Origin: Haplodiscus bocki
Lineage: Eukaryota
DNA: 64,000 bases
NCBI GenBank assembly: GCA_965655095.1
Contig: OZ296650.1
Location: 134,044,001 to 134,108,000 of the forward strand
Direction of reading: 5' to 3'
Shown: positions 2,087-52,776 of the stretch, one piece after another
Layout: each line of letters opens with the position of its first letter
How positions within the stretch are numbered: the first letter of the stretch is position 1
Notes under the pieces: generated by a model
What the model was told of the DNA's origin: nothing
The model's database searches: none
The model's input: only the letters and a program-made list of their open reading frames with translations
Made by a program: the position numbers and the translations under genes

Positions 2087-2124
2087 GCCTTGGTTTCGCT
2101 CAGAGGCCTTCGCAAAACCAAGGC
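2087..2124. promoter_or_regulatory. Conserved 13-12-13 inverted repeat upstream of polyprotein (unit 1)
   Basis: GCCTTGGTTTCGC-tcagaggccttc-GCAAAACCAAGGC, one mismatch; same motif in all four units. Confidence 0.85.
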
Positions 2125-2409
2125 GCTTCTGTTTTTCATTATTCAATTCGCAATGGAAACTGTAACTGTTATGGAAACAGTCCTTTCCTAAAAACTTCAA
2201 AAAGGTTTGAAATGCAGGAAGGAATAAATATCACATTTTGTATGTCGAATTCATAGCAGCCTCTGGAGCTCTATTTATCGCAAATAGGTCATTGGCGACT
2301 TCAATTGTTTGGGGTCTGTAATTTTTTTTGTGTTTCAAATAGATATGGTAAATTTTGACATCCTGCTTCCTTTTTTTGTGCAATCAAACCTGCAATCAAA
2401 AAGCAAAAC

Positions 2410-13392: not shown

Positions 13393-14010
13393 AAAAATTC
13401 GTCATAACCGTCATTTGTTTCGGCACTTTGGCCAAAATTTTTTTATCGTCAAAAAATTATCTTTCAAGTTATGGAGTCAATTTCACAATGGAGCCGCTCC
13501 AGAACGCAAGTTATGTGCATCAATGTGGGAGATATGACGAAATGATCGATTTTCGGCATTTTTTTTCAAATTCGTTCCGTCATATCTCCACACTTATGAC
13601 GATTTGACAGAAAATTTTCGCATGCGTATAGGCCACAGTTAATGTGCTTCACACAAGAAGTTTCGGCCAAATGCGTATGGATACTGCTGGAGGTTGCAGA
13701 AAAAAACCGCAAAATTTTGCCAAAAATAGGAATCATTCCGTCATAAGTCCTTAAACAATTGACCTAGAATGATCTAACCGGAACCATTGTTCTTAGAATT
13801 GTAAAGTATGCCTGCATACAAAGTTTGAACCAAATCGTATGGGTGGGAGCTGAGATCGCTATTTCTACACCCCCGTTTCCACAGATGTAAAACACTAACT
13901 ACTAAAACGGCTCGGCAAAGGGGCCCCTCCCCCGCCTCGCAAAGGCCTGATATGGGGCAAAAACCCCTGACCACCCAGTGGAGGCAACGGTGCAAATTAC
14001 TAGAGGGCGG
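13393..14010 (+). repeat. Terminal module (~600 bp) with CGTCATA/TATGACG motifs and GC-rich hairpin end, unit 1
   Basis: Homologous to 30308-30915, 47336-47950 and 48378-48995. Ends GGGGCCCCTCCCCCGCCTCGC...GACCACCCAGTGGAGGC..CGGTG.AAATTACTAGAGGGCGG. Confidence 0.85.
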
Positions 14011-14749
14011 GATTTTTTCCATCCAACTTTTTTTTCTGCATCAATTCTAGTGAGTGGTCCGCAATTCTAATCTAAAATTCTCGTTATTTTAAACGGAAAC
14101 TGTTGTTTGTTCTTTTTTACGATACCTTTCTCCAGGCTGAAGATTTGCTCGCACAACGCAGATTCAACTGCTATATGCACAGTTTGTTTCACACCGTAAA
14201 TGTGCGTTTGCCTTGCAAAACCTATAGTTGTTTTTTTGTTTTTCTTTTAAGGTTCCTGACAGCAGCAATGAAGGATGGCAAACGTACTTTCTCATCGATT
14301 TTTTCCCAAAGTCAGCTCACAACTGTCAAGTTAGAAATTTTCCACTTTATCAGCTGCAGAGTTACAATATGACTAAACAGACCTACCCGTGACCGGTTTC
14401 CATAACAATGGACGGCTTCATTGGAGTTCCTTTCCATTTACTGAATCTACATTTTCTGAAGATATCAAATGATTCCGCAATGAGAGAAATTTCTGAAGCA
14501 TTTCTTGGTGGTTCTCGTTGCCTTTCTTTGTGCTTCAGAGGAACAATATAGGTGTTATGTGCTCCTCCACATCAGTTGATTTTTATAAAACATGAAAATG
14601 TACATTTAGGTGTTCTGTACTGGAAAAAATTCATGAATAAGAAGTTTTGCGCCAAAACATTTCATCCATTATGTAACTATAATATTCATAGACGTATGTA
14701 TAAAATGTACATAGACGTTTGATGCTTCCGGAAAATAACCAGATGAGAA

Positions 14750-15850
14750 GTTACAAGCCGTATTCATCACTGAATTAAGACAGTTGTCTTCATCATAATA
14801 TCGTCAAACATAAATTATGACAAGATAAAGGCCAACTTGATGACGGATCAGTAATATGAGGTCGATTGAATATATGACTTTCATTTATCGAGTCGTAAAA
14901 GTAGCGCTTTCATTCTGTACATTTTCAGCTTTTGTCAACATAAAACGTGGTTTGTGAAAGCAATTTTAACAATATGTGAAGGTAACGTATACAGTTAAAA
15001 CGTTGCTTCTTTACTCTTGATGTCTGTTTCGAGTGTTTCCGGTTTCAAAGACTTTATTCTTTTACATACTATTCGAAACTGCTCGCGTTTTACAAACACT
15101 TTTGTCCAAGTTTTTCGAGAGAACATATTTCATTGGTTCTGACGCATACATATCGGAATTTTACACTTTTTTCAAAGAAACTTTTGAATATTGTGTGAAA
15201 AAATGCCTCTCGTTGTCAGTGAAATTTATCCGCCAACAGCGAGTTTTGGGGACGTGTTTTTCCCGTTAAGTGTTGCCGGATTTAGTTTTTGGATAATGCG
15301 TTTTCATATCAAATCATAAACTCATTAACAACAACTCGACATTGCCAATTTCTGATCCCTCATTTGAACCCTCTGAAGTACACACTTTTCTTTTGTCATT
15401 CGATCATTTGAACTCTTCATTCTGTGAATCCTGACTCACTGAAGTCTCAACTGACTATGGTCTACATGTTTTGACTTCTGTCGATAAATTGTGGTAATTG
15501 TTTCGGGTGATTTACTTTACTGACGTTTCTCTGGGCGAAGAATGCTGGATAATGCTGGTAGAATCGTGGGCTGACTACTAGGTGTTCTTCCACAATTTCC
15601 AAATTTAAAACGCGAACTTCACTCTCATTATGACACACGATTTGTTAATGTGGTTCATGGAGCATGAGAGGCGTAAAAGATTTGAGAAGTATACAACATA
15701 ATCGTAACTTTAAAATCATCCCGATTGATGCCAAGGATGATTGGCATTGAACGAACAGTGTCAACGGGCTGCTCAAAGTTGAGCATGTCAATGGTTTTGC
15801 TACCCAGAAAATGTTTTCTTTACTTTTTACCTGTCTACCGCCTAAAAGCT
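14750..15850 (+). repeat. Diverged copy of window positions ~1-1100
   Basis: Collinear shared blocks such as attatgacaag.taaaggcca, tcctgactcactgaagtctcaactga, gctgactacta, caaagttgagcat. Confidence 0.8.
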
Positions 15851-17213
15851 ACAAAGTGTTAACATGCAAGTAGGCAGAGTCACATTACCTATATTTTTCT
15901 AACAAACTTGACAGTTTGCTCTTCATTTCATCGTGTTTTTATTAGTATTGAAAGTTCCTGATGTTCGTGTTGCCTGTGAGTTTCATTCTATTTTCCATGT
16001 GTTCAACCATGCAATCGTTTTTACCATTCTCGGAAGGAAAATCAAGACCGAATGATCATACCGAATTGACATCATATTATCGTTAGTTTTGACCATAAAA
16101 AAACGGCCTTTCCCAAAGATACTGTTTGGATTCGGACGTGTTTTGTAGAGATATTACGGAAAAAACATTGCGTGTGGAAAAAATTAATGAGGAAAACTAC
16201 TGCTTCAACATTCATAGCAAACTGTGTGTTACCTTTGGCGCTGAAGTACCACGCATGTGACTGTGCATCAACTTTGAAACGCACTTAAAACAAAACGACT
16301 TCTAATTACAATCTTTAGTTGTTGAAATGAAACTTTGAGAAGGTAAAATTGTTGTCATGATGTTTCGCCGCGAAAAAAGACTGCCCCTTGCCGTTTCTTG
16401 TTTCAAAGTTTCATAATTCCTATCTGTTTTATACGATTGTCAACATGAATGTTTTATTTTTAGCATGTTACATAATCGCCGTCGATATTATTGATTGAAT
16501 TTTTATTGATCAACCGCTGCTCCAGGCAATTCTTATCTCAAGTAAGTCACTTGGTTGTGACAGCTTCCAAAACCTCCGTTCCATGGAATGATTTTGGAGG
16601 CCAGGATTTTCCCAAGAAAGTGACGAGATTGGGAGAATCATTCAATCATAGTTACCTAAGTTGAAAGGTTTTTGGGTTTTCTACAAGAATATGTTTTTTT
16701 TTGTGGAGCGAATTTTCACCTGGTATCAAACTTCAGTCAAAGACTATGGGGCGTAACTTCAATTTTCCTCAATTCGTAGTAGAATCTGGGGAAAACTTTA
16801 TTTTTATTCCCTTTCTTTGCTGCTCACTTTTCATGATCTGTTTTTTAAAGTTGACTTGCAGCGCTGCTGAAGTGCACATTTTCCCAAACAGCTTAAGGAA
16901 TTCGTATGAGTTGCCTCAACACTAATGAGTTCTCAGTTGATTTTTCCAACTGAACATTGTTGGTTTCGAAGAACGATTGTGATGTGCATTGTAGTCTCTT
17001 TTACTGAGGATTGTGGAAAAAACTTGACAGAACTCGCCGTGTACACTACTAATTTACGGGAATCCGTAACATCGAGATGCGTTCCACTTGTATGGGAGAA
17101 CGGAAAATATTTTCGTAAATACGGTTTTTAAACAACACAAGATTCGCAATTAACGCTCATTACATCGCCGCCTCTCCAAGTAAATAACTGTTTGTTTTCA
17201 TTCTCTGATGAAT

Positions 17214-17251
17214 GCCTTGGTTTTGCTTCGTTAACTGCGCAAAACCAAGGC
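17214..17251. promoter_or_regulatory. 13-12-13 inverted repeat (unit 2)
   Basis: Perfect GCCTTGGTTTTGC-ttcgttaactgc-GCAAAACCAAGGC. Confidence 0.9.
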
Positions 17252-17449
17252 CCACATTGCATGTATTTTTCTGGATACTCCTTTTTTCGAATTAATTAGA
17301 AGCTACCGTTACTTGAACAGTTTGAAAGCCGAGCAAAACGATGTCATTTTGTACGTTGGTTCTATAATGGCGCCTACTCTTTACATTGTATTCACTATTA
17401 AAGATCAGTGATTGATAGACTTTTGAGCGAAGTTTGTTGTGAAAGAGTA

Positions 17450-30307: not shown

Positions 30308-30915
30308 GAATCATCATAACCGTCATTATTTTCGGCAATTTCACCTAAACTTTTTTTTGTCGCAAAGTTTTTTTTCTTTTGATACAGTTCCCGTCACGTT
30401 GTGACGAAAGCTCACATCACTTTTTCGACATCAACTTGGGAGAAATGACAAAATGCTCGATTTTGGCCTAGTTTTGACAACTTTGAAAGGTCATATCTCC
30501 TAGGGCAATAGGAGCTGGCCAAAAATTTTTGGCATGTAGGTAGTCCACAACAATTGTGCTTCATACAAAAAATTTCGGTCCATTGCTATGGATAAAGTGT
30601 GGAGATTTTGCGAAAAAAACATCGAAAATGGCCAAAAACCAGGATCATTGCGTCATATCTCCCCAACCAAAACAAAAACAATGATGTAGGTGCCAAAAAT
30701 CTTCATACATCGGCGGACTCTAGCCACATGCAAAGTTTGATCGAAATCGTATGGTTAGGTTTCGAGATCGTCTCCTTTTCGGCGGGTTCAGTGTAAGTGT
30801 AAACTTGATTTTTGAAGCTCGGCACAGGGCCCCTCCCCCGCCTCGCAACATGGTTTTGTGGGGCTAAAGAGCTAGACCACCCAGTGGAGGCGACGGTGAA
30901 AATTACCAGAAGGCG
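30308..30915 (+). repeat. Terminal module, unit 2
   Basis: Starts tcataaccgtcatt; ends GGGCCCCTCCCCCGCCTCGC...GACCACCCAGTGGAGGCGACGGTGAAAATTACCAGAAGGCG. Confidence 0.85.
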
Positions 30916-33900
30916 TGAGGTTTGAATCGGTGTTTCTTTCGTGTTCAGATTTATTTTCTGCGACAAACGGGCGTAGTCCTGTCATTGTGCGTCAGTCAAC
31001 GTGAAGCCGTGAAGCAGTATGTTGTCAATTTTTGTGACGAAGACGAAAAATGCCTTTTGGGCGGCAAATATTGACAAAATTATCGTCGTCAATCCTTATT
31101 TCAGATTGTTGTTCTAACTTCTATGTCTCCTGCATGAGAGGTAACTTTGTTTTCCTGTAGACGCACTGGATTTGCCGATGCAGTTTGGGAAAGGTGCAGT
31201 TAGGCGGTGAATACGAAGGGGCCGGAAGTATGCTGAGCAATGAACAGTTGTTATCTTGGAACAAAATATGTTTTTGTTAAAATTTAAGTTTAACAGTTAC
31301 TTTTTAATCTTTTCTTCAGCTACCAAAATTCTGGGTTTTTGTCCAATTCATTAGTAAAATTTATCTGTACTTAAAATATGAAAGGTGAGTAAAGTTTTGT
31401 TTTAACTCTAAGTTTTTATCCATACTTTTGCTGTTTCTTTTGGAGCTGTTCCCAGAAATTTTTTTGTCTCATTGCTGTTGTTGTTTCTTTAAACAAAGAA
31501 AAAACTTGACTGGTGTTCAATTACGCACTCCAAAGTTATGTTTGGATTCTGCCTTCGTGGAAAAAACAATAATTGTTTTGTTGTTTCTAATGTTTTCTGC
31601 AGGGATGAACTTGACAATGCAGCTTTGCAATGGGATACTAACATTTAGTGAACAAAAATCAGGATATTGGAAGCGGGTGGTCTCCACGAACCTTAAGCGT
31701 TGTTTGAACCTCGAAAATCACGAGCAAGTTTCTCCAGTTTCTCATACCTATGAGATTCATTTTCAAGGTTTTCAATGATTGTTATAACTTACATTGGTTT
31801 TTTGAAAAATGTGTCTGATTAATATCAACCACCCATTCCGCCGCTTTCGAAAATGAATTTCTGAATAGTTTTGTTGAATGAAATTTTAATGTTCAAAAAA
31901 AAGAGGCAACGGAATGATGACTTGTTTTTGATCGACACCAAATGCTATTTTTTTTCCGGGCTCAGGTGGAGTTTTTTATTGGAAACGTTGCACTACGCAT
32001 CTGGTAGGTAATTTATTTTTTTGTTGTTTTGTATTTTAATGGATAACACGATTCATCACAATCATTTCTTCAATTAAGGCTTCCTGCGCTGTAGCTGCTT
32101 CTTTTTGTTTGAATCAAGCGTTTCTTGACGGGAAAGGTCCGGTTTCCCCTTGTGTTGGCATGAAGTTTCACTAACCAATAATGTTTTTCAATCAGCACAT
32201 AAGTAGAAAAGTAAAGATGGCTACTGCACGCTTCCTCGTGGCTTCATGTTTTCGCGTTAATTCGCTTTCTTCATTTGTTTACAACGTTGTCCGAGCCAAT
32301 TTTCCCTAAATAATTACGTTTTTTATTCATGGCTTCCCATTGACATGACTGTCCTGCTTTTACGGTAAACATTTTTAAGAAAAGCACCCAACCTTTTTTT
32401 CCGCAATAATGTCTTCCTAAAAATAATTTCCTTTTTTGAAGACTGTACTGACAATTCGAAATTTCCGATATTTTCGCGAAACTAATAAGTTTCGTTAGTC
32501 CAGATTGAGTAACGAACGGGGCATTTCCTCAGCTATTTAATTCCATCACTTGTTCAACATTTTACCGAATTTCAGATTCGTCCTTCCCTTCTTTGACTTT
32601 TTCTTCCTGATTTTAAATTATAGAATTTCCAGAAGCAAATTATTGTTTTTTATTGTAGAGCTTATTATTTTATTCACAATGTTTTTCTAATTTTGCTAAT
32701 TCCCATCCTGATACTCTGATCCCCCAGAGTCATTTGGAATTTTGGTGGACGGAAGGCAATTCACTTCTGCAACCTTATGCTAGTTCTCTTACGACTGTTC
32801 ACATTAGCATCTGTTTCACCGCAGACATATATAAAACATCGTTAATGTTTGTAAAGTGATTGATTAAAAATAAAAACCTATTTCATCTTTAACTTCATAA
32901 ATATCTTTTATATGCGTAACTTTTTCTCACACGCAATGGCTGGCTTTGGCAGCCTTTTTCTGCGGAATAATATTTCCGTTAACTGCCAATTTTCTCACTT
33001 GGACTAGCCTGGTTGTTTAAAAGTCAATGCTTTCGAATCTTAAGGTCCACTTTGAGGCTCTTTCTTTCCTGCAGTGAAGATTTTATGAAATGGCTCCACT
33101 GCCAGAAATTCAAAATTTCAAATATGCTTTACTTGTAAAAGATCATCGGGAAGTGGATGTTCATCTAATTGTCAGTAGACGGAATCAAGACAATAAGAAG
33201 CCAAGGCGGGATAGCCATATTGATCAATGACTTTAACCGATTCAATTTTTCAAGTTCAATATGCAAACTATATCACAACGATTAACTGTGTCTGAATGAT
33301 GCTAGGCAGTTGGAATTGCACACAACTATGGCACTTTTTGAACATCCTTGATCCATTCTTTTTATGTTTTCATCAAGAGATTTCGTATCTGGAGCCTTGA
33401 AATTTTCCCCTCTGTTCCATCAACGTGCCTGTTCATCTATCACCGTTAACGAAAGGACATGAAATAAAACAACGAATAGAGTTTGCGGAATTTGTTACTA
33501 AGCTCTTGATTTCAAGAAGCTTTCCAACGTTGAAGTAATTTAAAAAAAAATACTAAATTCATTTTTATGACGCCTAAAGACTGTCAGTAGTGGTTTACGT
33601 TGTGTATTTCAATGAAATAGGCCGTGAATATATGATTTTGAGAATTTGTCGGAGAGAAAAGTGAATTCGACGGAGAATGATGGAAATGTAGAGCTTCCCA
33701 TTGTTCCTCCCAACTGAAACAAAATTTGTACCAACAATTATCTGTACCCCCTTATTTGTATGAAATTGTTATTCGATGCTTTTTTTAGACTGTCAAATTC
33801 TTGAGCTTTTTCGTATCTTAAATCTGGTCTCTTTTCGTCTTCTATACGACATTTTCTTCGAAACCTAGACTGATCTTTTCAACTTTACATCTGTTAAAAC

Positions 33901-34171
33901 AAGCTACTTACTTCATAGATGAAACAAAGGTACTGATTTTTTTGGGCCCTTGAATATAAAGTTTTTTTACCTGCAAAAACTGAATTGAATTGATGCCTGG
34001 TTTACACCAGTGAAAAAGACTACGAACCTCTGAAAACTTTGTTGGGTCTTAATTTACCCAACTTCAGTTACTTGGTGCCATTTTTTGCAAAAAGTTTTCA
34101 AGTTCCTAAGTGTTTTGTGAAACTGAAAAATTACGTTGTGTTCGATTGAAGTCAATACAACTGCTGAGGAA

Positions 34172-34209
34172 GCCTTGGTTTTGCTCCTGTGCGTTCGCAA
34201 AACCAAGGC
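34172..34209. promoter_or_regulatory. 13-12-13 inverted repeat (unit 3)
   Basis: Perfect GCCTTGGTTTTGC-tcctgtgcgttc-GCAAAACCAAGGC. Confidence 0.9.
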
Positions 34210-34470
34210 GTCTGGTTTATGAATGGTTGGAATTGAATTATGATTTTTTACAGTACTGCCTTATCTTTTTCGCGGCATCGAACCTGAAATTTAATTAGGC
34301 AGGCAACGGTTTGTAATTGAACCGTAAAAGACTTCGCTCAAACGACAATTTGATGTATTTACCTATTATACGAATTTCCCTGCTAATTCTTCAACGTGTG
34401 TTTGTATTGTAACATCTTGTTTTTTCATATAGTCATGATCCCACTGAATTAATGTCTGTTGTGTTTTACA

Positions 34471-37400
34471 ATGTCAAAACAAAACAACAAAGGAAACTTG
34501 AAGCGTCGTCGTTGTACTTCCTGTGGACAATTTGTTGGAGAACATCATGTGTGTGCAAAATCAATTGAGCTGGAACTTCAGGTCAACGAGCCTTTAGGAA
34601 TTTTATACAAAATTCCCGATGCATCAGTTGCTGTGTCACCTACCGCGAGAACGGAGATACACAGCTCGCTGAACACTTTGGGGTTGATGGACTTTTTAAA
34701 GCCTACAAAAACAGCTATCGGAAACGATACAGTTATCTGCTCCATGCAGCCAGTCCGGGTAACAGCAGTGCTTGGGGACGGTAATTGCCTTTTTTCTTCT
34801 CTGGCAGTTGCTCTGGGACTGTCACATGAATGTGGCCCAATCATACGTAACATTATTGTCAGCCACATGAATTTAATCAGTTTCCCCCCTAATAGCCTGC
34901 AAACATCTGTTTACTCCGATGACTTTCCCAACCAACATCGTGTTTTGAGTTGTACTTCCGTCGATGAGTACCTCCGCGAATCTAGAATGGCAGAAAATGG
35001 TGTTTTTGGAAGCTGTGTAGAAATATATTCATTTTGCCAAATCTTCAAAGTAGATGTTTTTTTGTACCATGTTCCATTCAAATCCTGGATGATTTATGAA
35101 TGTTCCTCCAACGTAAATAGAAAAGGAATTTTCATTCCACAAAACCGGAATGCAAATCACTTCGAGGTGATAACAGAGCTGGTTTCAATTGGTCCTGAAA
35201 GCTCCAGCTTATCGCAAGTTGCATCAATTAATCGCCCTCCTTCTCAATCAAGCGAAACTAATCATTGGAGTCAAGCCTTGCAGAACTGCGAAGGAACTGA
35301 AACTGAACCAGCTTCGAAAAAAAGCAAAGTCAATTCTGATTACACCTGGGAAGAGCACCCTGACCCGCTCGCATTAAGTCTCTTCGCCAATTCTGTATCT
35401 ACCAAAATGAAGAAACTTTCGGCCTTGGAAACATTATCAACAAATTCAACGAACCTCCCAAAGAACGATTGTTCACAAATGCTGGAACCCCCATGTTTTG
35501 ACTTTTCCCCAACAGATAGTGTTTCAGGAAATATGCACACGAACGGCGAGTGCCCAAATTTGGGCGGATGTGACTGTTGCGCAAAATGCATGCGCCAGTC
35601 AACAGTTCTTTACCCTTTAAAGTTGAAGAGGAAGAATAAATTTGATCTTAAAAACCGTGTGTTTGGAAACAAGCTAACGGAGCCCATTGTTGTTTTATGT
35701 AAGCTCTGTCTTCTCTATTGCACAACCGAAAGTTATGATTGGTACAATGCTTGGCCCTCTGTGTTTTTCAGCCTATTGAGTGATCAAGACATGCCAGTTA
35801 GAACCCAAATGGATATTTTGTCTTTGTTACCTTGGGAATTGAGACAGCAGTGGATGACATCCATGCACTACTTTCCCCTGTGCGTTCAAAGATGTCTAAG
35901 TCGGAAACGGATTGCTGGGAAATGTTCCGTTGATGGGACGCTTCGTTTGCGTCGTTTCCACGAACTCATGAAAACCTTGAAGCAGACTAACATTGCTCTT
36001 GCCCTGGACAATGAACCTTATCCCAACGTCCGCTGCCCATATGGGTGCTGGTGTTTCATTGAAGAATCAGGTTGGATACCCGCAAATCACTTCATCAATC
36101 TTTTTGAAAGAAACTTTACCTCGTTTCAGTCCTCCAGCTTCCTGCATCTAAGAGGAATTAGGTCCGACTTTTTGACACCATTTGTGTCCCTGCGCCAGTT
36201 CTTAGTAGCGACTACAGTGCGAGTTGATGAAAAAGCGGGACTCGTGGTTCAGGCTTGCTCCAGGCACTCAAGAGGCTCCAGTGTGCAGTACTTTCATCCG
36301 CCATCACATCCTTCGCTGGTGCGAACTACAGTGAATTATGAAGAACGTCTTAGTGCCATCGCACCCACATTGTCGTTCATCTCAAGCATAAAAGCCAACT
36401 TCGCCAGTCATACGTACCAATTGCTAAGAAGTGTTGGCTCTTACAGTGGAATGAGCACAGTCCGATTGAAGCGGAAAACGCGCTGGGATTTCACTAGTGA
36501 CATTTTGTATCATGCTGAAGGCGTCGCTTGTCATTTCAGAGAAGACATCAAAACAATGATTCGTGAGTGGGTAAGACAGGGTAAAATCCTTGATGACGTA
36601 GCTTCGGGAATGCTGGATTATGTACCGGACAAAAAGAAAGTCAACAGTTGTTTGTCACAGGCCACTTCAATAGACTTACAAACATGCCTGAACCTCACGA
36701 AAATAGTGGAAATGAATGAAAAAGAATATCTCAACAATGTTGAGTCGTTGAGTTGTTACACTCTCGTTCATGGGAATGATGATTACGGCTGCTCTCCACC
36801 TCCTCTGGAAAATAGAGTAAGCATAGTATCGTGGATTGTGCAGGCTGCAGTTTGTGTTTCCCCAATACTTTGTCGATCCTTAGTGAAATCATCAAAATAC
36901 AGTGTGACACTTAGGCCTTTGTTCACTTTACTCAGGAAAGTGTTGCTTGGCACCGCAAGAATGAATACAGCAAAAGTTTTATGGCTTGTTAGAAAATCCG
37001 AACAAGCAGTCTCAGCTGTCATAGAACAAACTAACACTGATGACAAAACAGAGGGAACAACCGACTGTTGTTGTTTTGTAGGAGCAAGGTTTCTTTCAGA
37101 AATTTGTGACACCATTCAACACGTTCCCTTAAACAAACGGAAGAATATCGGTTCAGCCACAACAGAGCAAGTTTCGTACAACATGACTCATGCCATTTTT
37201 ACGACAGGTTCCCCAAAAAATTTGCGGAACAAGGTGAAACCACCGTTAACCCTGATTATTTCCGACAATGAATTCGAATTGATTGCAGTTGGAACGAAGG
37301 ATGGAAGCAGCAAGGGAGAACCGAGGTGGTTGGTTAGACATGGAGGGAGGTTTCAGGGGTTTTGGCTCATTGAGAAAAGTAAAAAATTTGCCACAAAAAC

Positions 37401-40400
37401 AGAAGGCTCTCCGACTGATGCCCTGGAAACTTTCATTCGGGGTTATTGGACAATTGCAATTTATCAAAAGTCAAGAAATGTTGAATTGATTGATTTGAAG
37501 TGGAAATTTCTGAGCACTTTGACAGGTCAGGGTATTTTTATTTGTGCACATCACACAATTCCTTTAACAAGAGATTTCAGAAACAGTGGTTTCCAATGTA
37601 GATGTAATCGTGCATCGTTTTTGCGCTGCCCGCATTTGCAGTGCTACTCTTGCGTTTGCAAGCGTCTTTTCAATGAAGGTCTACAGCAGCAACACAGACG
37701 TATTTTAATTGATTCAGTACCGTTGGAGAAGTTAAATAAAACTAATTCCCCTTCTCTGGTATCGGAATCATCTTCGTCACGGGATTTTATTGAGCCCAAC
37801 AGCATGCCTGCAAATGAACCAATTCAACCAGATGCGGCAGCAGAAACGCTTGACATTGCATCAAGCAACAGTTCGTCCGTCAGTTATATTGTTCATCCGG
37901 AAACAAATGACGAAGAATTCGAAGATGACAACTTGAGAATAATGGCTACATTAAAAACCAACTCAGATGAAAAACTGATTTCCGTGGATCTTGAACGAAA
38001 AGAAGATGCCTTCAAACTACCGCTCCATATTCTTTTAAACTCACAATGCAATCTTCTTTATCGACGTAACGGGAATCCAATCAGCCTTTCTCTGAAAGAA
38101 AAACGTTTCCTGGAAAATATTTCAGCTGTTTCGACGTCTGCATTACCGCTCATTCAACCCGAAGCTCTTCTTTTTCCATCGATTTTTTGGTGTCAAGCTA
38201 GCAGCGGCAGTTTTCCAGGAGCAATACCAACGGCTTTATACAATTCATCCAAGTACAACAAACAGCTGGGTTTCGCCGGTTTGGATGACATGCTTCGAAC
38301 TCGAATCAAGGACGGCTCTCTTTTGACATCTTGCAATCCTACTTATTTGCAGTATGTGTTTGATTGCCTCTTGAACATGCAGCTTCATAAAAGTGACATT
38401 AGGATAATACTAAATCGAGGATGGCAAGAAGTTAATTCGGTTCCTCATAATTGCTCTTTTCTTTCGACTCAAACTTTCAAGTTTGATTGTGCCGAAAGTC
38501 GAAAAAATGTCTGCGAACTTGCGGCTTTGATTACAGACAAAAATCCAACCTACTTTGTGACATACACTTGTAGTCAATCGACCCACCCGGGGATTCGCAA
38601 AATCTTTGAAGCACTGCATGAAATGTATCCCGCAGAAACCACTCCAAAGGAAGTACTTGCAGCAGCAATTCAAGCTGAGCTCATGCCCATGCTCAGGTCT
38701 TGGTACCGCGCCTCTCAATATGTAATGGAATGGGTGAAAAATTCACCAGAAGAACCACTTGGTCCTGTGTCTCATATTTGGATGAGGTACGAATGGCAAG
38801 AAGAGACAGCTGGCTTTCCACACTTGCATGCTATATTGTGCACACCAGAAGATAAATTTAGTGATGATGTACGATCTCGAGTTTGCTGTTCAAAACAAAC
38901 GTTTTTGGGTGGCTTAGAAGTCAGTTGCCCCGAATTGAACGCAGTCGAACGTTTCCAACTGGGTAAACTTTACCAAAAGTATCAAACCCATAACTGTTCG
39001 AAAGGCCGTAAACGTTGCCATAAGAAGACAGACAGGCTGGACAAACCAATTTGTCGTGTACCTAAATATCCTCCTTCGAATTGTTTTTCTTTCAAGGAAA
39101 TTCCTGTGAACTTTTCCTGCGAAACAATGGGACTTCTGCGAGAAATGGAACTGGCAGACATAGATGAAAACTCGCTATTCCCAAAAGTGAAAGATCCTTT
39201 AACGGCCGGAAAACATCATTATCCCACTGTTTCTAACGAACATTATTCACCAACGAACGCTGCTCTTTTTGCTTTGACACAATCCAGCACCAATGTTCAA
39301 ATATGTGACGACTACATGGCCCCCCGCTACGTTGCAAAATATGCAGCCGGCATTGAATCTCGAGCAGTTGCCAAAATTGTTGCTGGTGAAACAGAAAATA
39401 GTGTCAAAGTTTTAACAGAACCAATCGCACATGAAAAAATAGCTGGGGTACAGGCTTCGCAAAAGAAAATGAGAGGCGATGAAAAACAAAAATCGGTAAC
39501 TGGTCGTGTGGTCAGCATAACAGAGTGTCTCTGGTGGTCCTTACAGCTTCCTTATGTCTGCACAAATGTCGATTTTGTTCACGTGCCAACTGTTCCCAAA
39601 GAAAATCGATCTGGAATTATCACTGAAAAACGCTTTAGCAATAAAATTAAGTTGGGCGCCACGTTTATGGAAGGAATCCGAGTTCGGAAACACGTTTTAC
39701 AACTTCCAAAGCACCGGCAGTTCACAAGAACACAAAGTTTTCTTCTTGCAGATGTTGAAAACAGCTCTATTTCGCCAGACAAAGTAACAGTTTTTGGACT
39801 CCGCCCACCTGAACTTTTGTTTGTCTCGAAGTTAAAAAATTACTACAGTTGGTTTGTTCGTTGTAAACCGCAAACAAAAAAATCCATCAGCAATCATGAA
39901 GTGTTCTTGAAGAGAAGCTTCCGCAGAAGTTGTTGGGTTGATGCATTGGGGTATTTGGTTAAACTACGCCCTTGTTCAGTGGACGCTTTCGTAAATTTCT
40001 GTCGTGCAAATGGTACCGATGGACGGGATGGGATTCTGAAACGCGAAATGAGAATACACATTGTTCCGTTGCTTGTGACGAAAAAAGCATCACAATTTGT
40101 TGCTCACTGGAAGCAGTTGTCCGAAGAAGATGCCGTGGTTGTTTTCAGTAACGTTTTGCCGAATAACCCAACTAAATTTCTACTACATGTGCTCTTGACT
40201 AATGGAGAATTTGACACAGAGATGGACATTCTGAACGTGCAGTCTTTCAAAGAAGCTTTCACAACAGCTAAAATTATTCCAAGCTGTAACATAAACGCCA
40301 AGACCGTGCAAAATTTAACACGGAATTATTTGCTGAAACAGCTGCGTTTTGTACCTGGGTCCTCGAAACTAATTGACAAATACCTTTTAATGGCTCACAG

Positions 40401-42528
40401 TGTTCTTTCAGAGGCTCTGTTAGTAAACATCCTTTATTTCGCTGCTGCGCTACCGCCTGTGCTGGACAGAAGTGTCATTGAAGAATACGAAGAATCACTA
40501 GCAGTGCAAATCAGTATGGAAAAATGCAAAATGGTAGCTTTTCTTCACACTTGTCAGAAACAATTACCTACTGAGCAGGCGATGCTAGATGCAACCATCA
40601 CCGTCCCTTTACCTTGGAAACCAGTCATTCAGAAAAGCCCGGATCAATGTCGAAACTCTTATACGGAACAGAAGAGTGTATTAAACAAACTGTTGAGTTC
40701 CATCGACATTTATAAAGAAGGACTTTGCAGTTTCATCAGGCATCAAATTGTCTTTGGACCTCCAGGAAGTGGGAAAACTTTCGTTGTGCTAAAATCGCTT
40801 GCATATGCTTTATGCCAAGGTCTCAACTGTGTAGTGACATCTTTGGCTGCTGAAAGATCTGCCGCTTTGGCTGGAAAACATCTGAATGCCCTCATCCCAT
40901 TTCCAGTGGAAAAACACGCTTCTGCAGAATCGCTCTCGAGAACAGCCCTGTCCAACCTACAACGATCTCCTATTAAGAGCCGCTTTCTGCAAAATCTACA
41001 CGTTCTTTTCGTGGAGGAATTGTCAATGATTTCTAGCGAACTTTGGGCTGCCACGGATTATGTGCTTCAGGTTATCACAGCAAACTATGTTCCATTCGGT
41101 GGGAAACTTGTTATTGCAACCGGAGATTTCTTCCAACTTCCTCCACCATCAGGATCTTGTTTGATGAGTTCTTCTTTTCCTCTCACAACGTTCACTTTTC
41201 TCAAACTGGAAAATTTCGTTCGCATGCAAAACAAAAATGGCCAAGAACTGTTGTCTTTGTTGTCAGCGACTCCAAAAACTGACGGCAATGCGAGGCGTAT
41301 CTGGGAAATTATCGGTAAAGGTTGCAATTTTGTCCATTCATGGAAAGACGTGCCGAATGATAGAATTCGAATTTTTGCCACTCGACAAGCAGAACGTAAA
41401 GCAACTGAAGACAAAATAATCGATGTTAAAAACAGCGGTACCCAATTTTATGAAAATGCGGCAATTGATGAAATGTGCGTTTCAAGCACTGACAACTGGA
41501 CCGAGGCGTCGCCAAGTACATCAAAATTTCTCAACAAAAAGTGTCTTGAACCCCAGTCGTTGTTTCTGTACCCCGGAGCCATTTTACGACTAACAGTGAA
41601 TATGCCATCTATATCCGCGTATCAGGGTCAACTCTGTGTTCTGCTTTCTTTGGATACAATTCAGAATGGCTCTGTGACAATTGCTCTAGCACCAGCTGGT
41701 TGCCGAAGTATTCCACCGCTTGTTGTGATCAAAAACAAATGGCGTTGTGTTGTTATCGGCAAAGAAACTGGTGTTACCTACCGATTAAACCACAAAACGG
41801 TTTGCAGACGAATCCAGTTTCCACTAAATTTATTTGTTGCGTCAACCATTCATAAGACAATGGGTGAAACGCTTCCGATGGTCGCAACCCAAATAGTTGG
41901 ATCGAAAGACTTCGCTTTGTGGCTTCCCGAACAACTCTATGTTGTAATGAGTCGAGTAAGAAGTCTGAATCAGGTGACTTTTGTTGGATCGAAGGAATCT
42001 AACAAACGAGCAGTCTTGGATTTAGTCTGCAAAAATTCGCAATGGGCTGAACTCACGAATGAAATTTTGACTAAAAGTTCCGCTGGTGACCCTACAATTG
42101 ATCATGCAAGAGCATCTCCTTTTCCCCCTTCAATGAGAGAACTACCCGTTCAAAATGTGGGCTTCTGTTACTTGCTCCAAAGTGAACCACAGCAGCACCT
42201 TCTGTACATTGGCTCCACTATGTCGTTAGTGCGTCGTTTGCGAGAGCACAATGCAGGACTGGGTTCCTCCTTCACCAAGGTACAAAATCGTTTGCCCTGG
42301 ATGGTTTGTGCTTATGTTACTGGTTTCAATTCGATTAATGCTTCAGAGAGAATCCGAGCATTCGAGAAGGAGTGGCTGAATGCGGCAACACACTACGTCA
42401 ACGCAAAAAAGAAAAATGTGTCACTTCCCACAGCTATCAATTTGGGGGAAATTGTCGCAAAAAATTGGCTATACAAAGAAGATGATTTGAAACTAGTAGT
42501 GTGCTGCAGGTCATCAACTGTGTCTTGA
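34471..42528 (+). CDS. Intact ~2685-aa RepHel-type transposase: Zn knuckle, OTU protease, Cys-rich region, HUH/Y2 Rep, Pif1-like helicase, GIY-YIG nuclease
   Basis: OTU GDGNC (34774-34788) and NHF (~35158). Rep FVTYTC (~38554), YEWQEETAGFPHLH (38788-38829), YVAKY (39328-39342). Walker A GPPGSGKT (40756-40779), EELSM (41014), GDFFQLPP, TIHKTMG, QLYVVMSRV. GIY-YIG GFCYLL..LYIGST..RRLREHN..W...FEKEW (from 42160). Confidence 0.93.
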   Translation: MSKQNNKGNLKRRRCTSCGQFVGEHHVCAKSIELELQVNEPLGILYKIPDASVAVSPTARTEIHSSLNTLGLMDFLKPTKTAIGNDTVICSMQPVRVTAVLGDGNCLFSSLAVALGLSHECGPIIRNIIVSHMNLISFPPNSLQTSVYSDDFPNQHRVLSCTSVDEYLRESRMAENGVFGSCVEIYSFCQIFKVDVFLYHVPFKSWMIYECSSNVNRKGIFIPQNRNANHFEVITELVSIGPESSSLSQVASINRPPSQSSETNHWSQALQNCEGTETEPASKKSKVNSDYTWEEHPDPLALSLFANSVSTKMKKLSALETLSTNSTNLPKNDCSQMLEPPCFDFSPTDSVSGNMHTNGECPNLGGCDCCAKCMRQSTVLYPLKLKRKNKFDLKNRVFGNKLTEPIVVLCKLCLLYCTTESYDWYNAWPSVFFSLLSDQDMPVRTQMDILSLLPWELRQQWMTSMHYFPLCVQRCLSRKRIAGKCSVDGTLRLRRFHELMKTLKQTNIALALDNEPYPNVRCPYGCWCFIEESGWIPANHFINLFERNFTSFQSSSFLHLRGIRSDFLTPFVSLRQFLVATTVRVDEKAGLVVQACSRHSRGSSVQYFHPPSHPSLVRTTVNYEERLSAIAPTLSFISSIKANFASHTYQLLRSVGSYSGMSTVRLKRKTRWDFTSDILYHAEGVACHFREDIKTMIREWVRQGKILDDVASGMLDYVPDKKKVNSCLSQATSIDLQTCLNLTKIVEMNEKEYLNNVESLSCYTLVHGNDDYGCSPPPLENRVSIVSWIVQAAVCVSPILCRSLVKSSKYSVTLRPLFTLLRKVLLGTARMNTAKVLWLVRKSEQAVSAVIEQTNTDDKTEGTTDCCCFVGARFLSEICDTIQHVPLNKRKNIGSATTEQVSYNMTHAIFTTGSPKNLRNKVKPPLTLIISDNEFELIAVGTKDGSSKGEPRWLVRHGGRFQGFWLIEKSKKFATKTEGSPTDALETFIRGYWTIAIYQKSRNVELIDLKWKFLSTLTGQGIFICAHHTIPLTRDFRNSGFQCRCNRASFLRCPHLQCYSCVCKRLFNEGLQQQHRRILIDSVPLEKLNKTNSPSLVSESSSSRDFIEPNSMPANEPIQPDAAAETLDIASSNSSSVSYIVHPETNDEEFEDDNLRIMATLKTNSDEKLISVDLERKEDAFKLPLHILLNSQCNLLYRRNGNPISLSLKEKRFLENISAVSTSALPLIQPEALLFPSIFWCQASSGSFPGAIPTALYNSSKYNKQLGFAGLDDMLRTRIKDGSLLTSCNPTYLQYVFDCLLNMQLHKSDIRIILNRGWQEVNSVPHNCSFLSTQTFKFDCAESRKNVCELAALITDKNPTYFVTYTCSQSTHPGIRKIFEALHEMYPAETTPKEVLAAAIQAELMPMLRSWYRASQYVMEWVKNSPEEPLGPVSHIWMRYEWQEETAGFPHLHAILCTPEDKFSDDVRSRVCCSKQTFLGGLEVSCPELNAVERFQLGKLYQKYQTHNCSKGRKRCHKKTDRLDKPICRVPKYPPSNCFSFKEIPVNFSCETMGLLREMELADIDENSLFPKVKDPLTAGKHHYPTVSNEHYSPTNAALFALTQSSTNVQICDDYMAPRYVAKYAAGIESRAVAKIVAGETENSVKVLTEPIAHEKIAGVQASQKKMRGDEKQKSVTGRVVSITECLWWSLQLPYVCTNVDFVHVPTVPKENRSGIITEKRFSNKIKLGATFMEGIRVRKHVLQLPKHRQFTRTQSFLLADVENSSISPDKVTVFGLRPPELLFVSKLKNYYSWFVRCKPQTKKSISNHEVFLKRSFRRSCWVDALGYLVKLRPCSVDAFVNFCRANGTDGRDGILKREMRIHIVPLLVTKKASQFVAHWKQLSEEDAVVVFSNVLPNNPTKFLLHVLLTNGEFDTEMDILNVQSFKEAFTTAKIIPSCNINAKTVQNLTRNYLLKQLRFVPGSSKLIDKYLLMAHSVLSEALLVNILYFAAALPPVLDRSVIEEYEESLAVQISMEKCKMVAFLHTCQKQLPTEQAMLDATITVPLPWKPVIQKSPDQCRNSYTEQKSVLNKLLSSIDIYKEGLCSFIRHQIVFGPPGSGKTFVVLKSLAYALCQGLNCVVTSLAAERSAALAGKHLNALIPFPVEKHASAESLSRTALSNLQRSPIKSRFLQNLHVLFVEELSMISSELWAATDYVLQVITANYVPFGGKLVIATGDFFQLPPPSGSCLMSSSFPLTTFTFLKLENFVRMQNKNGQELLSLLSATPKTDGNARRIWEIIGKGCNFVHSWKDVPNDRIRIFATRQAERKATEDKIIDVKNSGTQFYENAAIDEMCVSSTDNWTEASPSTSKFLNKKCLEPQSLFLYPGAILRLTVNMPSISAYQGQLCVLLSLDTIQNGSVTIALAPAGCRSIPPLVVIKNKWRCVVIGKETGVTYRLNHKTVCRRIQFPLNLFVASTIHKTMGETLPMVATQIVGSKDFALWLPEQLYVVMSRVRSLNQVTFVGSKESNKRAVLDLVCKNSQWAELTNEILTKSSAGDPTIDHARASPFPPSMRELPVQNVGFCYLLQSEPQQHLLYIGSTMSLVRRLREHNAGLGSSFTKVQNRLPWMVCAYVTGFNSINASERIRAFEKEWLNAATHYVNAKKKNVSLPTAINLGEIVAKNWLYKEDDLKLVVCCRSSTVS

Positions 42529-47335: not shown

Positions 47336-47950
47336 AAAAATTCGTCATAACCGTCATTTTTTTCGGCAAAGTGGCCGAAACTTTTTCATCTTCGGAAAAT
47401 TGCCTTTGAAGTTATGGAGTCGATTTCATACTGGAGCCACTCCAGAGGGCAAACTATGCACTTCAATGTGGGAGCTATGACGAAATGGTCGATTTTCGGC
47501 ATTTTTTTCCAACTTTGATCCGTCATATCTCAACACCTATGACGAGTTGGTAGAAAATTTTTTGCATGTGTGTAGCCCTTAGTTATACTGCTTCACACGA
47601 AAAGTTTCGGCCAAATGCATGTGGTTCCTTGCAGGGCTGTCGGTAAAAAACTGCAAAATGAGGCCAAAAAACAGAATCATCTCGTCATAATTCCCCAACC
47701 ATTTTTGCTAGAATGATCTAACTTGCACCATTGTTCTTAGAATTGAAAGTTATGCCCGCATGCAAAGTTTGATCAAAATCGTATGGGTGGGAGCTGAGAT
47801 CGTTATTTTCCTATACCGTATTTGCATAGAGTTATTTCTTATATTTTAACGCGAGGCAAAGGGGCCCCTCCCCCGCCTCGCCTGGACCTATGAGGGGCGT
47901 AATCCCGTGACCACCCAGTGGAGGCACCGGTGAAAATCACCAGGTGGCGG
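47336..47950 (+). repeat. Terminal module, unit 3
   Basis: GCGAGGC-aaaggggcccctccccc-GCCTCGC hairpin (47851-47881), CCACccaGTGG, GGTGAaaaTCACC. Confidence 0.85.
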
Positions 47951-48995
47951 TCACTGGTTATGCCATTCTGAAATTTGAACAAATTTGCTAGTGTTTTCTT
48001 TCAACACAGTAATGATTTTTGCAAATGCAAATTTTATATATTGAAATTTAGCCTGTGAAAACTTTACCGATCTGGATGACACATCCATGATGGAGCTTGC
48101 AAACATTTTAGCCCCGTTGTTTCTCCGTGTCGCTTCGCTAATCTACGAAACAACGGGGCGGGGCAATTAACATTTTGGCAATTGTGGTGAATTTTTTAAA
48201 CAGAAATGCATCAAAGTTTGATTTTTTTTCGCAGAATGACTTTTACTCCAAATTTTACCCCAAGTTGAAGAATCATTTGCACCAAAGCAGTTTGCGAAAA
48301 AAATCCGACCACAAAAATATCAGAAACGAACTCTACGGGGAAAATTGAGTTTTCTGCTAAAAAATTTTTTTTTTTCGGAAAATTCGTCATAACCGTCATT
48401 TTTTTCGGCAAACTGGCCAAAACTTTTTCATCATCGGAAAATTATCTTTCAAATTATGCAGTCAATTTCAGACTGGAGCCAGTCCAGAACGCAAGCTACG
48501 TACTTCAATGTGGGAGCCATGACGAAATGGTCGATTTTCGGCATTTTTTTCCAAATTTCATCCGTCATATCTCCACACCTATGACGAGTTGGTAGAAAAT
48601 TTTTTGCATGCGTGTAGCCCTTAGTTATTCTGCTTCACACAAAAAGTTTCGGCCAAATGCATGCGGTTACTTGCAGGGCTGTCGGTAAAAAACTGCAAAA
48701 TGGGGCCAAAAAACAGAATCATCCCGTCATAACTCCCCAACCAATTTTGCTAGATTGATCTAACTTGCACCATTGTTCTTAGAATTGAAAGTTATGCCCG
48801 CATGCATAGTTTGATCCAAATCGTATGGGTGGGAGCTGAGATCGCTAATTCCCTATACCGTTTGTGCATATTTGTTTTTTTCTTATATTTTAACGCGAGG
48901 CAAAGGGGCCCCTCCCCCGCCTCGCAAGGACTAATGTGGGGCGCGATCCCCTGACCACCCAGTGGAGGCGACGGTGAAAATTACCAGATGGCGGG
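47951..48995 (+). mobile_element. ~1.05-kb non-coding mini-unit (non-autonomous derivative or terminal duplication)
   Basis: ~430 bp of unique sequence with a 13-bp hairpin, then a second terminal module (48378-48995). Confidence 0.65.
48111..48159. other. Perfect 13-bp GC-rich hairpin
   Basis: GCCCCGTTGTTTC (48111-48123) and GAAACAACGGGGC (48147-48159); 23-nt loop containing CGCTTCGCT. Confidence 0.8.
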
Positions 48996-52451: not shown

Positions 52452-52489
52452 GCCTTGGTTTTGCTCAGTAGCCCTCACAAAACCAAGGC
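52452..52489. promoter_or_regulatory. 13-12-13 inverted repeat (unit 4)
   Basis: GCCTTGGTTTTGC-tcagtagccctc-ACAAAACCAAGGC, one mismatch. Confidence 0.85.
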
Positions 52490-52776
52490 TGAAAGGATTT
52501 ATGCATTTCGTTCGATATGCTATTTTTTCTCAGTTTTGTTGGGTGTTTGCTCGGATGATTTAATCCCTTCACTGAAGTTGAGTTGCAGTATGAATGTATT
52601 CATAGAGAATTTTTTTCTGTCAGGTATTTTCCCGCTTGTGTATTAGGGAAATAAATTGTTTAAAAAACGTGTTGCGCCAGTTTGAACCACTCGTTTCTTT
52701 TTCAAATAGATATGGAATGACATGATCATGACCTTCTGTTAAATTGTCACTGGCTCCTTATGACAATTTTTGAAAT

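What the first reader, a model, noticed from the sequence alone, without database searches (positions are those of the whole stretch)
17214..17251. Near-invariant palindrome GCCTTGGTTTTGC-N12-GCAAAACCAAGGC upstream of all four polyproteins
Seen at 2087, 17214, 34172 and 52452. Arms are perfect or have one mismatch, the spacer is always exactly 12 nt with variable sequence, and the surrounding DNA is unalignable. The motif lies 200-290 bp before the ATG. Conserved arm sequence with fixed spacing suggests a dimeric protein-binding site or a cruciform. Inference: an autoregulatory operator, a Rep-binding origin, or the true left-end/termination hairpin, which would make the ~3.2-3.5 kb upstream transduced DNA.
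Basis: partly seen in the sequence, partly recalled or inferred. Interest (0 to 1): 0.8.

Follow-up and report, generated by a model that had tools for sequence, protein, structure and literature searches.

The report
Conserved palindrome upstream of rolling-circle transposase gene
A 38-base palindrome with identical arms sits upstream of the transposase gene in almost every full-length copy of a giant Helitron-like transposon; it is most likely a protein-binding control site inside the element and is not one of its ends.

Summary
GCCTTGGTTTTGC-N12-GCAAAACCAAGGC lies at 2087, 17214, 34172 and 52452, 198-287 nt before each polyprotein ATG, where chance predicts none.

In the 1.5-Gb genome:
- There are 70 perfect sites, all with a 12-nt spacer, and about 90 in all.
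- Free half-sites are no commoner than chance.
- 44 of 45 polyprotein N-termini checked have the motif at the expected place.
- Short non-autonomous units in the same arrays lack it. So do a distant polyprotein clade in this genome and relatives in another species.

It is not a terminus. Each unit begins 3.0-3.5 kb upstream with a 45-nt block (GACCACCCAGTGGAGGC...). That block and the leader behind it co-vary with the downstream gene. Within a family, homology runs straight through the palindrome.

Across families whose leaders are otherwise unalignable, only that block and the palindrome arms are shared. The arms are invariant, the spacer sequence is free and its length never changes. This pattern fits readout of duplex DNA by a two-fold symmetric binding protein.

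Best reading (about 0.4): an operator-like control site of the autonomous element's gene. The main rival (about 0.25) is a single-strand DNA hairpin acting in rolling-circle transposition. RNA data gave no usable start site.

An earlier follow-up in this scan had already described the array itself.

The parts
2087..2124 (+). Palindrome, unit 1. Arm 1 carries the family-fixed T11C change; spacer TCAGAGGCCTTC.
17214..17251 (+). Palindrome, unit 2. Arms perfect; spacer TTCGTTAACTGC.
34172..34209 (+). Palindrome, unit 3 (intact polyprotein). Arms perfect; spacer TCCTGTGCGTTC. It is the only inverted repeat with arms of 13 nt or more within 40 nt in the whole 17-kb unit.
52452..52489 (+). Palindrome, unit 4. 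Arm 2 carries the family-fixed G1A change; spacer TCAGTAGCCCTC.
13969..14013 (+). 45-nt left-end block of unit 2 (starts GACCACCCAGTGGAGGC). Its variant follows the downstream unit.
30875..30919 (+). 45-nt left-end block of unit 3.
47909..48952 (+). Short (1.04 kb) non-autonomous unit with its own left-end block and a shared 3' region. It has no palindrome.
48953..48997 (+). 45-nt left-end block of unit 4.
14014..17213 (+). Non-coding, T-rich 5' leader of unit 2, between the left-end block and the palindrome. It is family-specific and has no long ORF.
30920..34171 (+). 5' leader of unit 3. The genome holds 31 copies, all adjacent to class B or C polyprotein genes.
34471..42528 (+). Intact polyprotein gene with Helitron-type Rep, PIF1 helicase and GIY-YIG domains. 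Its ATG lies 261 nt after the palindrome.

Best explanation
The palindrome is an internal cis-element of the autonomous element. It lies 3.0-3.5 kb from the left end and 198-287 nt before the polyprotein start codon. Most likely it is an operator-like site on duplex DNA, where a two-fold symmetric (dimeric or two-domain) sequence-specific protein reads the two 13-bp arms at a fixed distance and controls expression of the polyprotein gene.

Shown: it is internal; it is specific to one clade; it is tied to the polyprotein gene; it is absent from non-autonomous units; the arms are invariant; the spacer sequence is free and its length is fixed.

Inferred: that a protein binds it; that the protein is element-encoded (for example the N-terminal Cys/His-rich part of the polyprotein) rather than a host factor; and that the effect is on transcription.
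For: 1. Tied to the gene. 44 of 45 polyprotein N-termini on contigs C1-C4 (a list drawn up without reference to the motif) have the palindrome with at least one perfect arm at the expected upstream place.
2. Not needed in cis by small units. At least 20 short 1.04-1.43 kb units in the same arrays have the end sequences but no palindrome and no single arm.
3. Selection on sequence. Families whose N-terminal protein is only 43-68% identical, and whose leaders share nothing else but the first 17 nt of the left end, keep the same 26 arm bases. The 12-nt spacer varies about as fast as the flanks within a family.
4. Spacing. All 70 perfect sites found with a gap of 10-14 allowed have exactly 12, as do the 9 variant sites, in leaders otherwise full of indels.
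5. Direction of constraint. Conserved stem with a free loop is the reverse of the Helraiser 3' terminator hairpin, where a loop mutant lost activity like a full hairpin deletion and the stem-swap mutant is set in contrast to it (PMC4778049). From general knowledge, it is also the reverse of virus-type Rep origins, where the loop is conserved.
6. The motif is not used elsewhere in the genome. The half-site 13-mer occurs 209 times: 140 inside perfect palindromes, and 69 others against 49 for the reversed control, with the excess explained by family variants that have one changed arm.
Against: - No transcription start is known. Three RNA runs gave no reads, and the one run with coverage is of unknown type.
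- No DNA-binding domain was recognised in the polyprotein N-terminal 1,340 residues by Pfam.
- The half-site centres are 25 bp apart (about 2.4 helical turns), so the two arms do not face the same side. That is unusual for a simple dimer.
- The first and last spacer bases (T and C) are invariant and not complementary, a conserved asymmetry that a purely symmetric site does not need.
- No other conserved promoter element lies between the palindrome and the ATG.
- The loci were found through perfect arms, so their arm invariance is by construction.
Confidence: 0.4

Rival explanations
1. The palindrome acts as a single-strand DNA hairpin or cruciform during rolling-circle transposition. When the helicase peels off the + strand, the palindrome folds. 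It would then serve as a Rep or nuclease binding site, a pause signal, or a priming site for complementary-strand synthesis, analogous to the single-strand origins of rolling-circle plasmids.
For: Both strands fold into a 13-bp stem with a 12-nt loop, at -15 to -18 kcal/mol as DNA and z of -3.8 to -5.3 for the perfect copies. The element encodes a Rep nuclease, a PIF1 helicase and a GIY-YIG nuclease. The GIY-YIG domain was read as SLX1-like in an earlier scan note; SLX1-type nucleases act on branched DNA (general knowledge). The only other conserved non-coding sequence in the leader is the left end, where Rep should act. The two family-fixed mismatches lie next to the loop, where a hairpin tolerates them.
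Against: Short non-autonomous units multiply in the same arrays without it. No compensatory changes are seen and the stem sequence is invariant, which a purely structural signal does not require. A hairpin loop need not keep an exact length, yet no indel is seen in about 80 sites. The two fixed mismatches are C.A on the + strand, which by analogy with Helitrons is the strand expected to be displaced, and G.T only on the - strand. The pattern is opposite to the Helraiser hairpin.
Confidence: 0.25
2. The palindrome is an RNA hairpin in a long 5' leader or intron of the polyprotein transcript. It would affect translation, splicing or RNA stability.
For: The leader is T-rich on the + strand, as transcribed non-coding sequence often is. 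Acceptor-like sequences (a pyrimidine run followed by AG) lie upstream of the ATG in all four units, about 40-70 nt before it in units 1, 3 and 4 and nearer in unit 2. The run X1 covers the leader at about a fifth of the depth of the ORF, though its type is unknown.
Against: RNA-binding proteins usually read loops and bulges, whereas here the loop is free and the stem sequence is fixed. There is no Rfam match. The two variant families would carry C.A mismatches in the sense RNA. No spliced joint was seen in X1.
Confidence: 0.1
3. The palindrome is the true or ancestral left end, or the junction of two elements joined head to tail (arm 1 being a right inverted repeat and arm 2 a left one). The upstream 3.3 kb would then be transduced DNA or belong to the previous unit.
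For: Helentron-type elements have 12-16 nt terminal inverted repeats, and a proto-Helentron has about 3.6 kb between its 5' stem-loop end and its left repeat (PMC11417382). A relative in another species (L026) has its ATG within about 90 nt of the GC-rich boundary sequence and no long leader.
Against: Half-sites do not occur alone above chance. All ten upstream regions read keep the leader back to the 45-nt block. The leader and the block follow the downstream gene family, not the upstream one. One array edge abuts non-element DNA exactly at the block (L025:4918). There is no third arm copy near the 3' end. No free copy of the leader exists elsewhere in the genome.
Confidence: 0.04
4. The palindrome is a functionless relic kept alike by recent common descent or gene conversion.
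For: Many copies are very young: class B leaders are 99-100% identical. The arrays also look partly like segmental duplications.
Against: Identity holds between families whose flanks on both sides are unalignable and whose proteins are 43-68% identical. Gene conversion confined to two 13-nt arms while skipping the 12 nt between them is not plausible.
Confidence: 0.03

Closest known systems
Operator-type inverted repeats bound by dimeric regulators, including sites through which mobile-element or viral proteins control their own genes (P-element transposase sites at its promoter, the AAV Rep-binding element in the p5 promoter, geminivirus iterons, the I-TevI operator). Named from general knowledge and not tested here.
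   Same: Two sequence-conserved half-sites at a fixed distance, a free spacer sequence, and a position just upstream of the gene that encodes the element's own enzyme.
   Different: No binding protein or start site is known here. The arms are long (13 bp) and 25 bp apart centre to centre. Nothing of this kind has been described for Helitron-like elements in the papers searched.
Helentron / HLE2 terminal structures: 12-16 nt (sub)terminal inverted repeats plus a short 3' stem-loop (PMC4067079, PMC11417382).
   Same: Arm length of 13 nt. The host element is Helitron-like, with a Rep-helicase polyprotein and a nuclease domain. An earlier follow-up in this scan also reported OTU and RPA-like parts, which were not re-tested here.
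   Different: Those repeats sit at opposite ends of the element and are kept by non-autonomous derivatives. Here both arms are adjacent, lie 3.0-3.5 kb inside the unit, and are missing from the non-autonomous units.
Helraiser / canonical Helitron 3' terminator hairpin (PMC4778049).
   Same: A palindrome in a rolling-circle transposon that can fold in the displaced strand.
   Different: That hairpin is 19 bp long and lies 11 nt from the 3' end. A loop mutant lost activity like a full hairpin deletion, and the stem-swap mutant is set in contrast to it. Here the stem sequence is invariant, the loop is free, and the site is near the 5' side of the gene.
Origin hairpins of Rep-encoding viruses, and subterminal hairpins of IS200/IS605 (general knowledge).
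   Same: HUH-type nuclease systems that use DNA hairpins.
   Different: Virus origins keep the loop (the nick site) and vary the stem. IS608 hairpins are subterminal and imperfect. Neither pattern is seen here.
Single-strand origins (sso) of rolling-circle plasmids (general knowledge).
   Same: An internal, non-coding palindrome away from the nick site in a rolling-circle replicon.
   Different: An sso is a larger, imperfect, strand-specific structure with conserved loop motifs. Here there is one simple stem with a free loop. The small units would need such a site too, and they lack it.

Membership tests
Helentron/HLE2 terminal inverted repeats | The two arms lie at (or within a few tens of nt of) opposite ends of the element. 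| tested here: not met
   Both arms are 12 nt apart and 3.0-3.5 kb from the left-end block. There is no further arm copy anywhere in the window.
Helentron/HLE2 terminal inverted repeats | Retained by non-autonomous derivatives (HINE/DINE-1-like). | tested here: not met
   The short 1.04- and 1.43-kb units in ten 10-kb loci and in the window have no palindrome and no single arm.
Head-to-tail junction of two termini | Each arm also occurs alone at array edges and at solo insertions. | tested here: not met
   There are 209 half-site hits: 140 inside perfect palindromes, plus 69 others against 49 for the control. The excess is explained by family variants with one changed arm.
Canonical Helitron 3' terminator hairpin | About 16-20 nt palindrome roughly 11 nt before a CTRR 3' end; function depends on the loop, while the stem can be exchanged. 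| tested here: not met
   The site lies on the 5' side of the gene. The stem is invariant and the loop is free.
Rep-virus type origin hairpin | A conserved loop sequence holding the nick site, with a variable stem. | tested here: not met
   Eleven different spacer sequences were seen, and only the first T and the last C are constant. The arms are invariant.
Operator-type dimer binding site | Inverted half-sites at a fixed distance, with spacer sequence free. | tested here: met
   All 70 perfect sites have spacer 12 although 10-14 was allowed, and so do the 9 variants. The spacer varies as fast as the flanks.
Operator-type dimer binding site | Lies in or next to the promoter of the regulated gene. 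| tested here: inconclusive
   The site is 198-287 nt before the ATG. The start site is unknown: RNA runs gave 0 reads, and the depth step near 34430 is in a run of unknown type.
Operator-type dimer binding site | A cognate sequence-specific binding protein exists. | not testable with these tools
   Pfam finds no DNA-binding domain in the N-terminal 1,340 residues. There is only a Cys-x2-Cys...His-x-Cys motif at residues 15-29 of the unit-3 polyprotein counted from its ATG.
Known structured RNA | A match to an Rfam family. | tested here: not met
   No match at gathering score anywhere in the window.

The most novel reading that the evidence does not exclude
The palindrome is the binding site of the element's own polyprotein (its N-terminal DNA-binding part). 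Through it, a eukaryotic rolling-circle transposon would regulate its own transposase gene, or mark the autonomous copy for a step that small units do not need. That would be the first operator-like control site described for Helitron-like elements. Because all families keep the same arms, it would be shared across them, allowing cross-regulation within mixed arrays.
Probability: 0.2. Interest if true: 0.7.

Novelty: new variant of a known kind. Interest (0 to 1): 0.5.

Why it matters
Almost nothing is known about how Helitron-like transposons control expression of their transposase, and only their end sequences have been studied. This genome offers a sharply defined 26-base candidate control site. 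It has been kept unchanged while everything around it diverged. It is present in nearly every autonomous copy and absent from the small dependent units. The site is short enough to test directly by binding and reporter assays.

The work also corrects the element map. The left end is a 45-nt block that earlier notes assigned to the right end, and the 3.3-kb leader belongs to the element and is not captured DNA.

Tried and rejected
- **RNA evidence.** One run search and the single read-laying run were used. The three RNA raw-read runs laid no reads on 30900-36899, so they test nothing. Run X1 is of unknown type, with contig depths in the thousands. It shows about a fivefold depth step near 34430, between palindrome and ATG. 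That could be a start site, a splice acceptor or a copy-number effect, so I did not use it as evidence.
- **Cross-species conservation.** Homologues from another assembly (L026-L028, 32-42% N-terminal identity) have neither the palindrome nor the 45-nt block. No shared palindrome of their own was found. The 13-nt match between L027 and L028 is at chance level.
- **Public collections.** A metagenome scan gave 12 contigs, of which only two (L042, L049; 88-93% identical to unit 2) are real. The rest, and the one viral hit, are unrelated palindromes.
- **Other negative checks.** No Rfam match. No DNA-binding domain by Pfam. No shift in base composition at the motif. No sequence relation to the 21-nt hairpins after the stop codon.
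- **Strand of the hairpin.** Both family-fixed mismatches give G.T on the - strand, but two cases cannot decide this.
- **Limits reached.** The variant sites beyond the first 100 listed rows could not be listed.

Full report
**Observation.** The pattern GCCTTGGTTTTGC-N12-GCAAAACCAAGGC occurs four times in the window, at 2087, 17214, 34172 and 52452, all on the + strand. The mismatch counts are 1, 0, 0 and 1, and no match appeared in 100 shuffles. Each site lies 198-287 nt before the ATG of a very long ORF or ORF series. The intact copy (34471-42528) carries Helitron-type Rep, PIF1 helicase and GIY-YIG nuclease domains. The four units are head to tail, 15-18 kb long, and only 60-78% identical in coding DNA. 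Between units the DNA around the motif does not align; self-BLAST gives only a 51-nt hit centred on the motif. An earlier follow-up in this scan had already described the window as an array of Helentron-like rolling-circle elements. I took that as a lead and checked only what bears on the palindrome.

**Genome-wide distribution.** The window is part of a 1.5-Gb eukaryotic assembly.
- A search allowing spacers of 10-14 nt found 70 perfect sites, all with exactly 12 nt, against none for the reversed control.
- Allowing up to 3 mismatches in the 22 core arm bases gives 101 sites against 11 for the control.
- The 13-nt half-site occurs 209 times. Of these, 140 lie in the perfect palindromes. The other 69 compare with 49 for the control.
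- I read nine of the unpaired half-sites. All were full palindromes of two families, each with one fixed change: T11C in arm 1 (unit-1 type) or G1A in arm 2 (unit-4 type).

Free half-sites are therefore not seen above chance. The spacers fall into about eleven family-specific sequences. Only the first T and the last C are constant.

**Link to the gene, counted without reference to the motif.** A search with the first 240 residues of the polyprotein listed about 100 N-termini of this clade, at 43-100% identity. For contigs C1-C4, where the half-site list is complete, 44 of 45 N-termini have a palindrome with at least one perfect arm at the expected upstream distance. A second clade of polyproteins in the same genome has about 31% N-terminal identity and open frames near 2,780 aa. 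It has no half-site at the corresponding places.

**Where the element begins.** Ten 10-kb stretches upstream of palindromes were fetched.
- In all ten, the family-specific leader runs 3.0-3.3 kb upstream of the palindrome to a conserved 45-nt block that starts GACCACCCAGTGGAGGC.
- The variant of this block follows the unit downstream of it, whatever lies upstream. What lies upstream may be another long unit, a 1.04-kb unit, a 1.43-kb unit, or, at L025:4918, DNA with no match to the element.
- The block is therefore the left end of each unit. In the window it lies at 13969, 30875, 47909 and 48953. The GC-rich hairpins just before it are the right end of the preceding unit.
- The leader of unit 3 occurs 31 times in the genome, always next to a class B or C polyprotein gene, and nowhere on its own.
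- Within a family, homology runs through the palindrome on both sides.

Together with the lack of free half-sites, this rules out the reading that the palindrome is a terminus or a junction of termini, and that the upstream DNA is transduced.

**Non-autonomous units.** The arrays also hold tandem runs of short units (1.04 and 1.43 kb) that carry left- and right-end sequences. A relaxed search found no palindrome and no single arm in any of them. Whatever multiplies these units does not need the palindrome in cis. This points to a function tied to the autonomous element's gene.

**Pattern of constraint.** In the complete leaders of units 2, 3 and 4 (3.5-3.8 kb each), the only collinear shared words of 10 nt or more are the first 17 nt of the left end and the palindrome arms. 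The proteins of these families are only about 50-68% identical at the N-terminus.
- Within families the spacer varies about as fast as the flanks: 2-3 of 12 columns, against 20-35% of flanking columns.
- Those loci were found through perfect arms, so their arm invariance is by construction. The unbiased support is the 44-of-45 count and the finding that imperfect sites are family-fixed single changes.
- Both tolerated changes lie in the three base pairs next to the spacer. The outer ten are invariant everywhere.
- No indel in the spacer was seen in any site.

Invariant arm sequence with no compensatory change, a free spacer sequence and strictly fixed spacing is what readout of duplex DNA by a two-fold symmetric protein predicts. 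It is the reverse of the Helraiser 3' terminator hairpin, where a loop mutant lost activity like a full hairpin deletion and the stem-swap mutant is set in contrast to it (PMC4778049). From general knowledge, it is also the reverse of Rep-virus origins. It does not match Helentron terminal repeats, which sit at opposite ends and are kept by non-autonomous derivatives (PMC4067079, PMC11417382).

**What speaks for the rivals.** Either strand can fold into a 13-bp stem with a 12-nt loop, and the element encodes enzymes that work on single-stranded and branched DNA. A role as a DNA hairpin during rolling-circle transposition therefore remains possible. Against it:
- The small units lack the palindrome.
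- The loop length is fixed.
- The two fixed mismatches are C.A on the + strand, the strand expected to be displaced, and G.T only on the - strand. Two cases cannot carry weight.

An RNA hairpin in a long leader or intron is also possible. The leader is T-rich on the sense strand, and acceptor-like sequences lie shortly before each ATG. But the loop is unconstrained, and there is no Rfam match.

**What could not be settled.** RNA evidence failed. The three RNA raw-read runs laid no reads. The only run with coverage is of unknown type, with contig depths in the thousands. It shows about a fivefold rise in depth near 34430, between palindrome and ATG. I report this but do not build on it. Pfam finds no DNA-binding domain in the N-terminal 1,340 residues; only a short Cys/His motif is visible at residues 15-29 of the unit-3 polyprotein. 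Relatives in another species (L026-L028) lack both the palindrome and the 45-nt block. In L026 the ATG lies within about 90 nt of the GC-rich boundary, so the long leader with its palindrome is peculiar to this clade. Public metagenome hits with the true motif are near-identical copies from the same or a very close species.

**Verdict.** The terminus reading is refuted. The best reading is an operator-like protein-binding site serving the polyprotein gene (confidence about 0.4). The main rival is a single-strand DNA hairpin role in transposition (about 0.25). It is a new variant of a known kind of cis-element, not reported for Helitron-like transposons in the papers searched. It is directly testable by start-site mapping, binding assays and reporter assays.

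Noticed in passing
window 13969-14013, 30875-30919, 47909-47953, 48953-48997: The conserved 45-nt block at unit boundaries belongs to the downstream unit (left end), not to the right end as earlier notes assumed. Its variant follows the downstream family in 22 boundaries read. The right end is the GC-rich hairpin pair ending ...GGGGC-N5-CCCCT just before it.
   Followed up: yes
L025:4918 (G000:C4, about 111.77 Mb, reverse-oriented locus): An array edge. DNA with no match to the element abuts the left-end block directly (...GTAGTTATTG|AGACACCCAGTGGAGGC). This gives one real 5' boundary.
   Followed up: partly
window 47909-48952; L016-L025: Tandem runs of short non-autonomous units (1.04 kb and 1.43 kb) sit immediately upstream of many long units. 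They share the 3' region and have their own left-end variant.
   Followed up: partly
G000:C3 133.76-134.29 Mb and other arrays: A second, distant polyprotein clade (about 31% N-terminal identity, open frames of about 2,780 aa) is interleaved in the same regions, mostly on the opposite strand. It lacks the palindrome.
   Followed up: partly
arrays on C3:3.16-3.23 Mb, C4:111.7 Mb, C9:1.74-1.86 Mb: Arrays are mosaics of different families joined head to tail. Class B copies on five or more chromosomes are 99-100% identical, which suggests very recent activity or duplication of whole array segments.
   Followed up: no
window 30900-36899 in run X1: A run of unknown type holds the element at contig depths of 2,000-32,000, far above what about 90 genomic copies would give in a 3-Gb DNA run. 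It may be RNA or amplified DNA. Depth rises about fivefold near 34430.
   Followed up: no
L026:5840-6010: In a relative from another species, the polyprotein ATG lies within about 90 nt of the homologous GC-rich right-end sequence. That family has no 3.3-kb leader, no 45-nt block and no palindrome.
   Followed up: partly
window 2330-2345, 17420-17435, 34415-34425, 52695-52712: Acceptor-like sequences (a pyrimidine run followed by AG) lie before each ATG, about 40-70 nt upstream in units 1, 3 and 4 and nearer in unit 2. Units 1 and 4 share the word TTTCAAATAGATATGG. A 5' UTR intron is possible.
   Followed up: no
window 1055-1065 and 15792-15801: A lone partial copy of arm 1 (TGGTTTTGCT) lies at homologous places in the leaders of units 1 and 2, with no partner arm. 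It is probably chance or a relic.
   Followed up: partly
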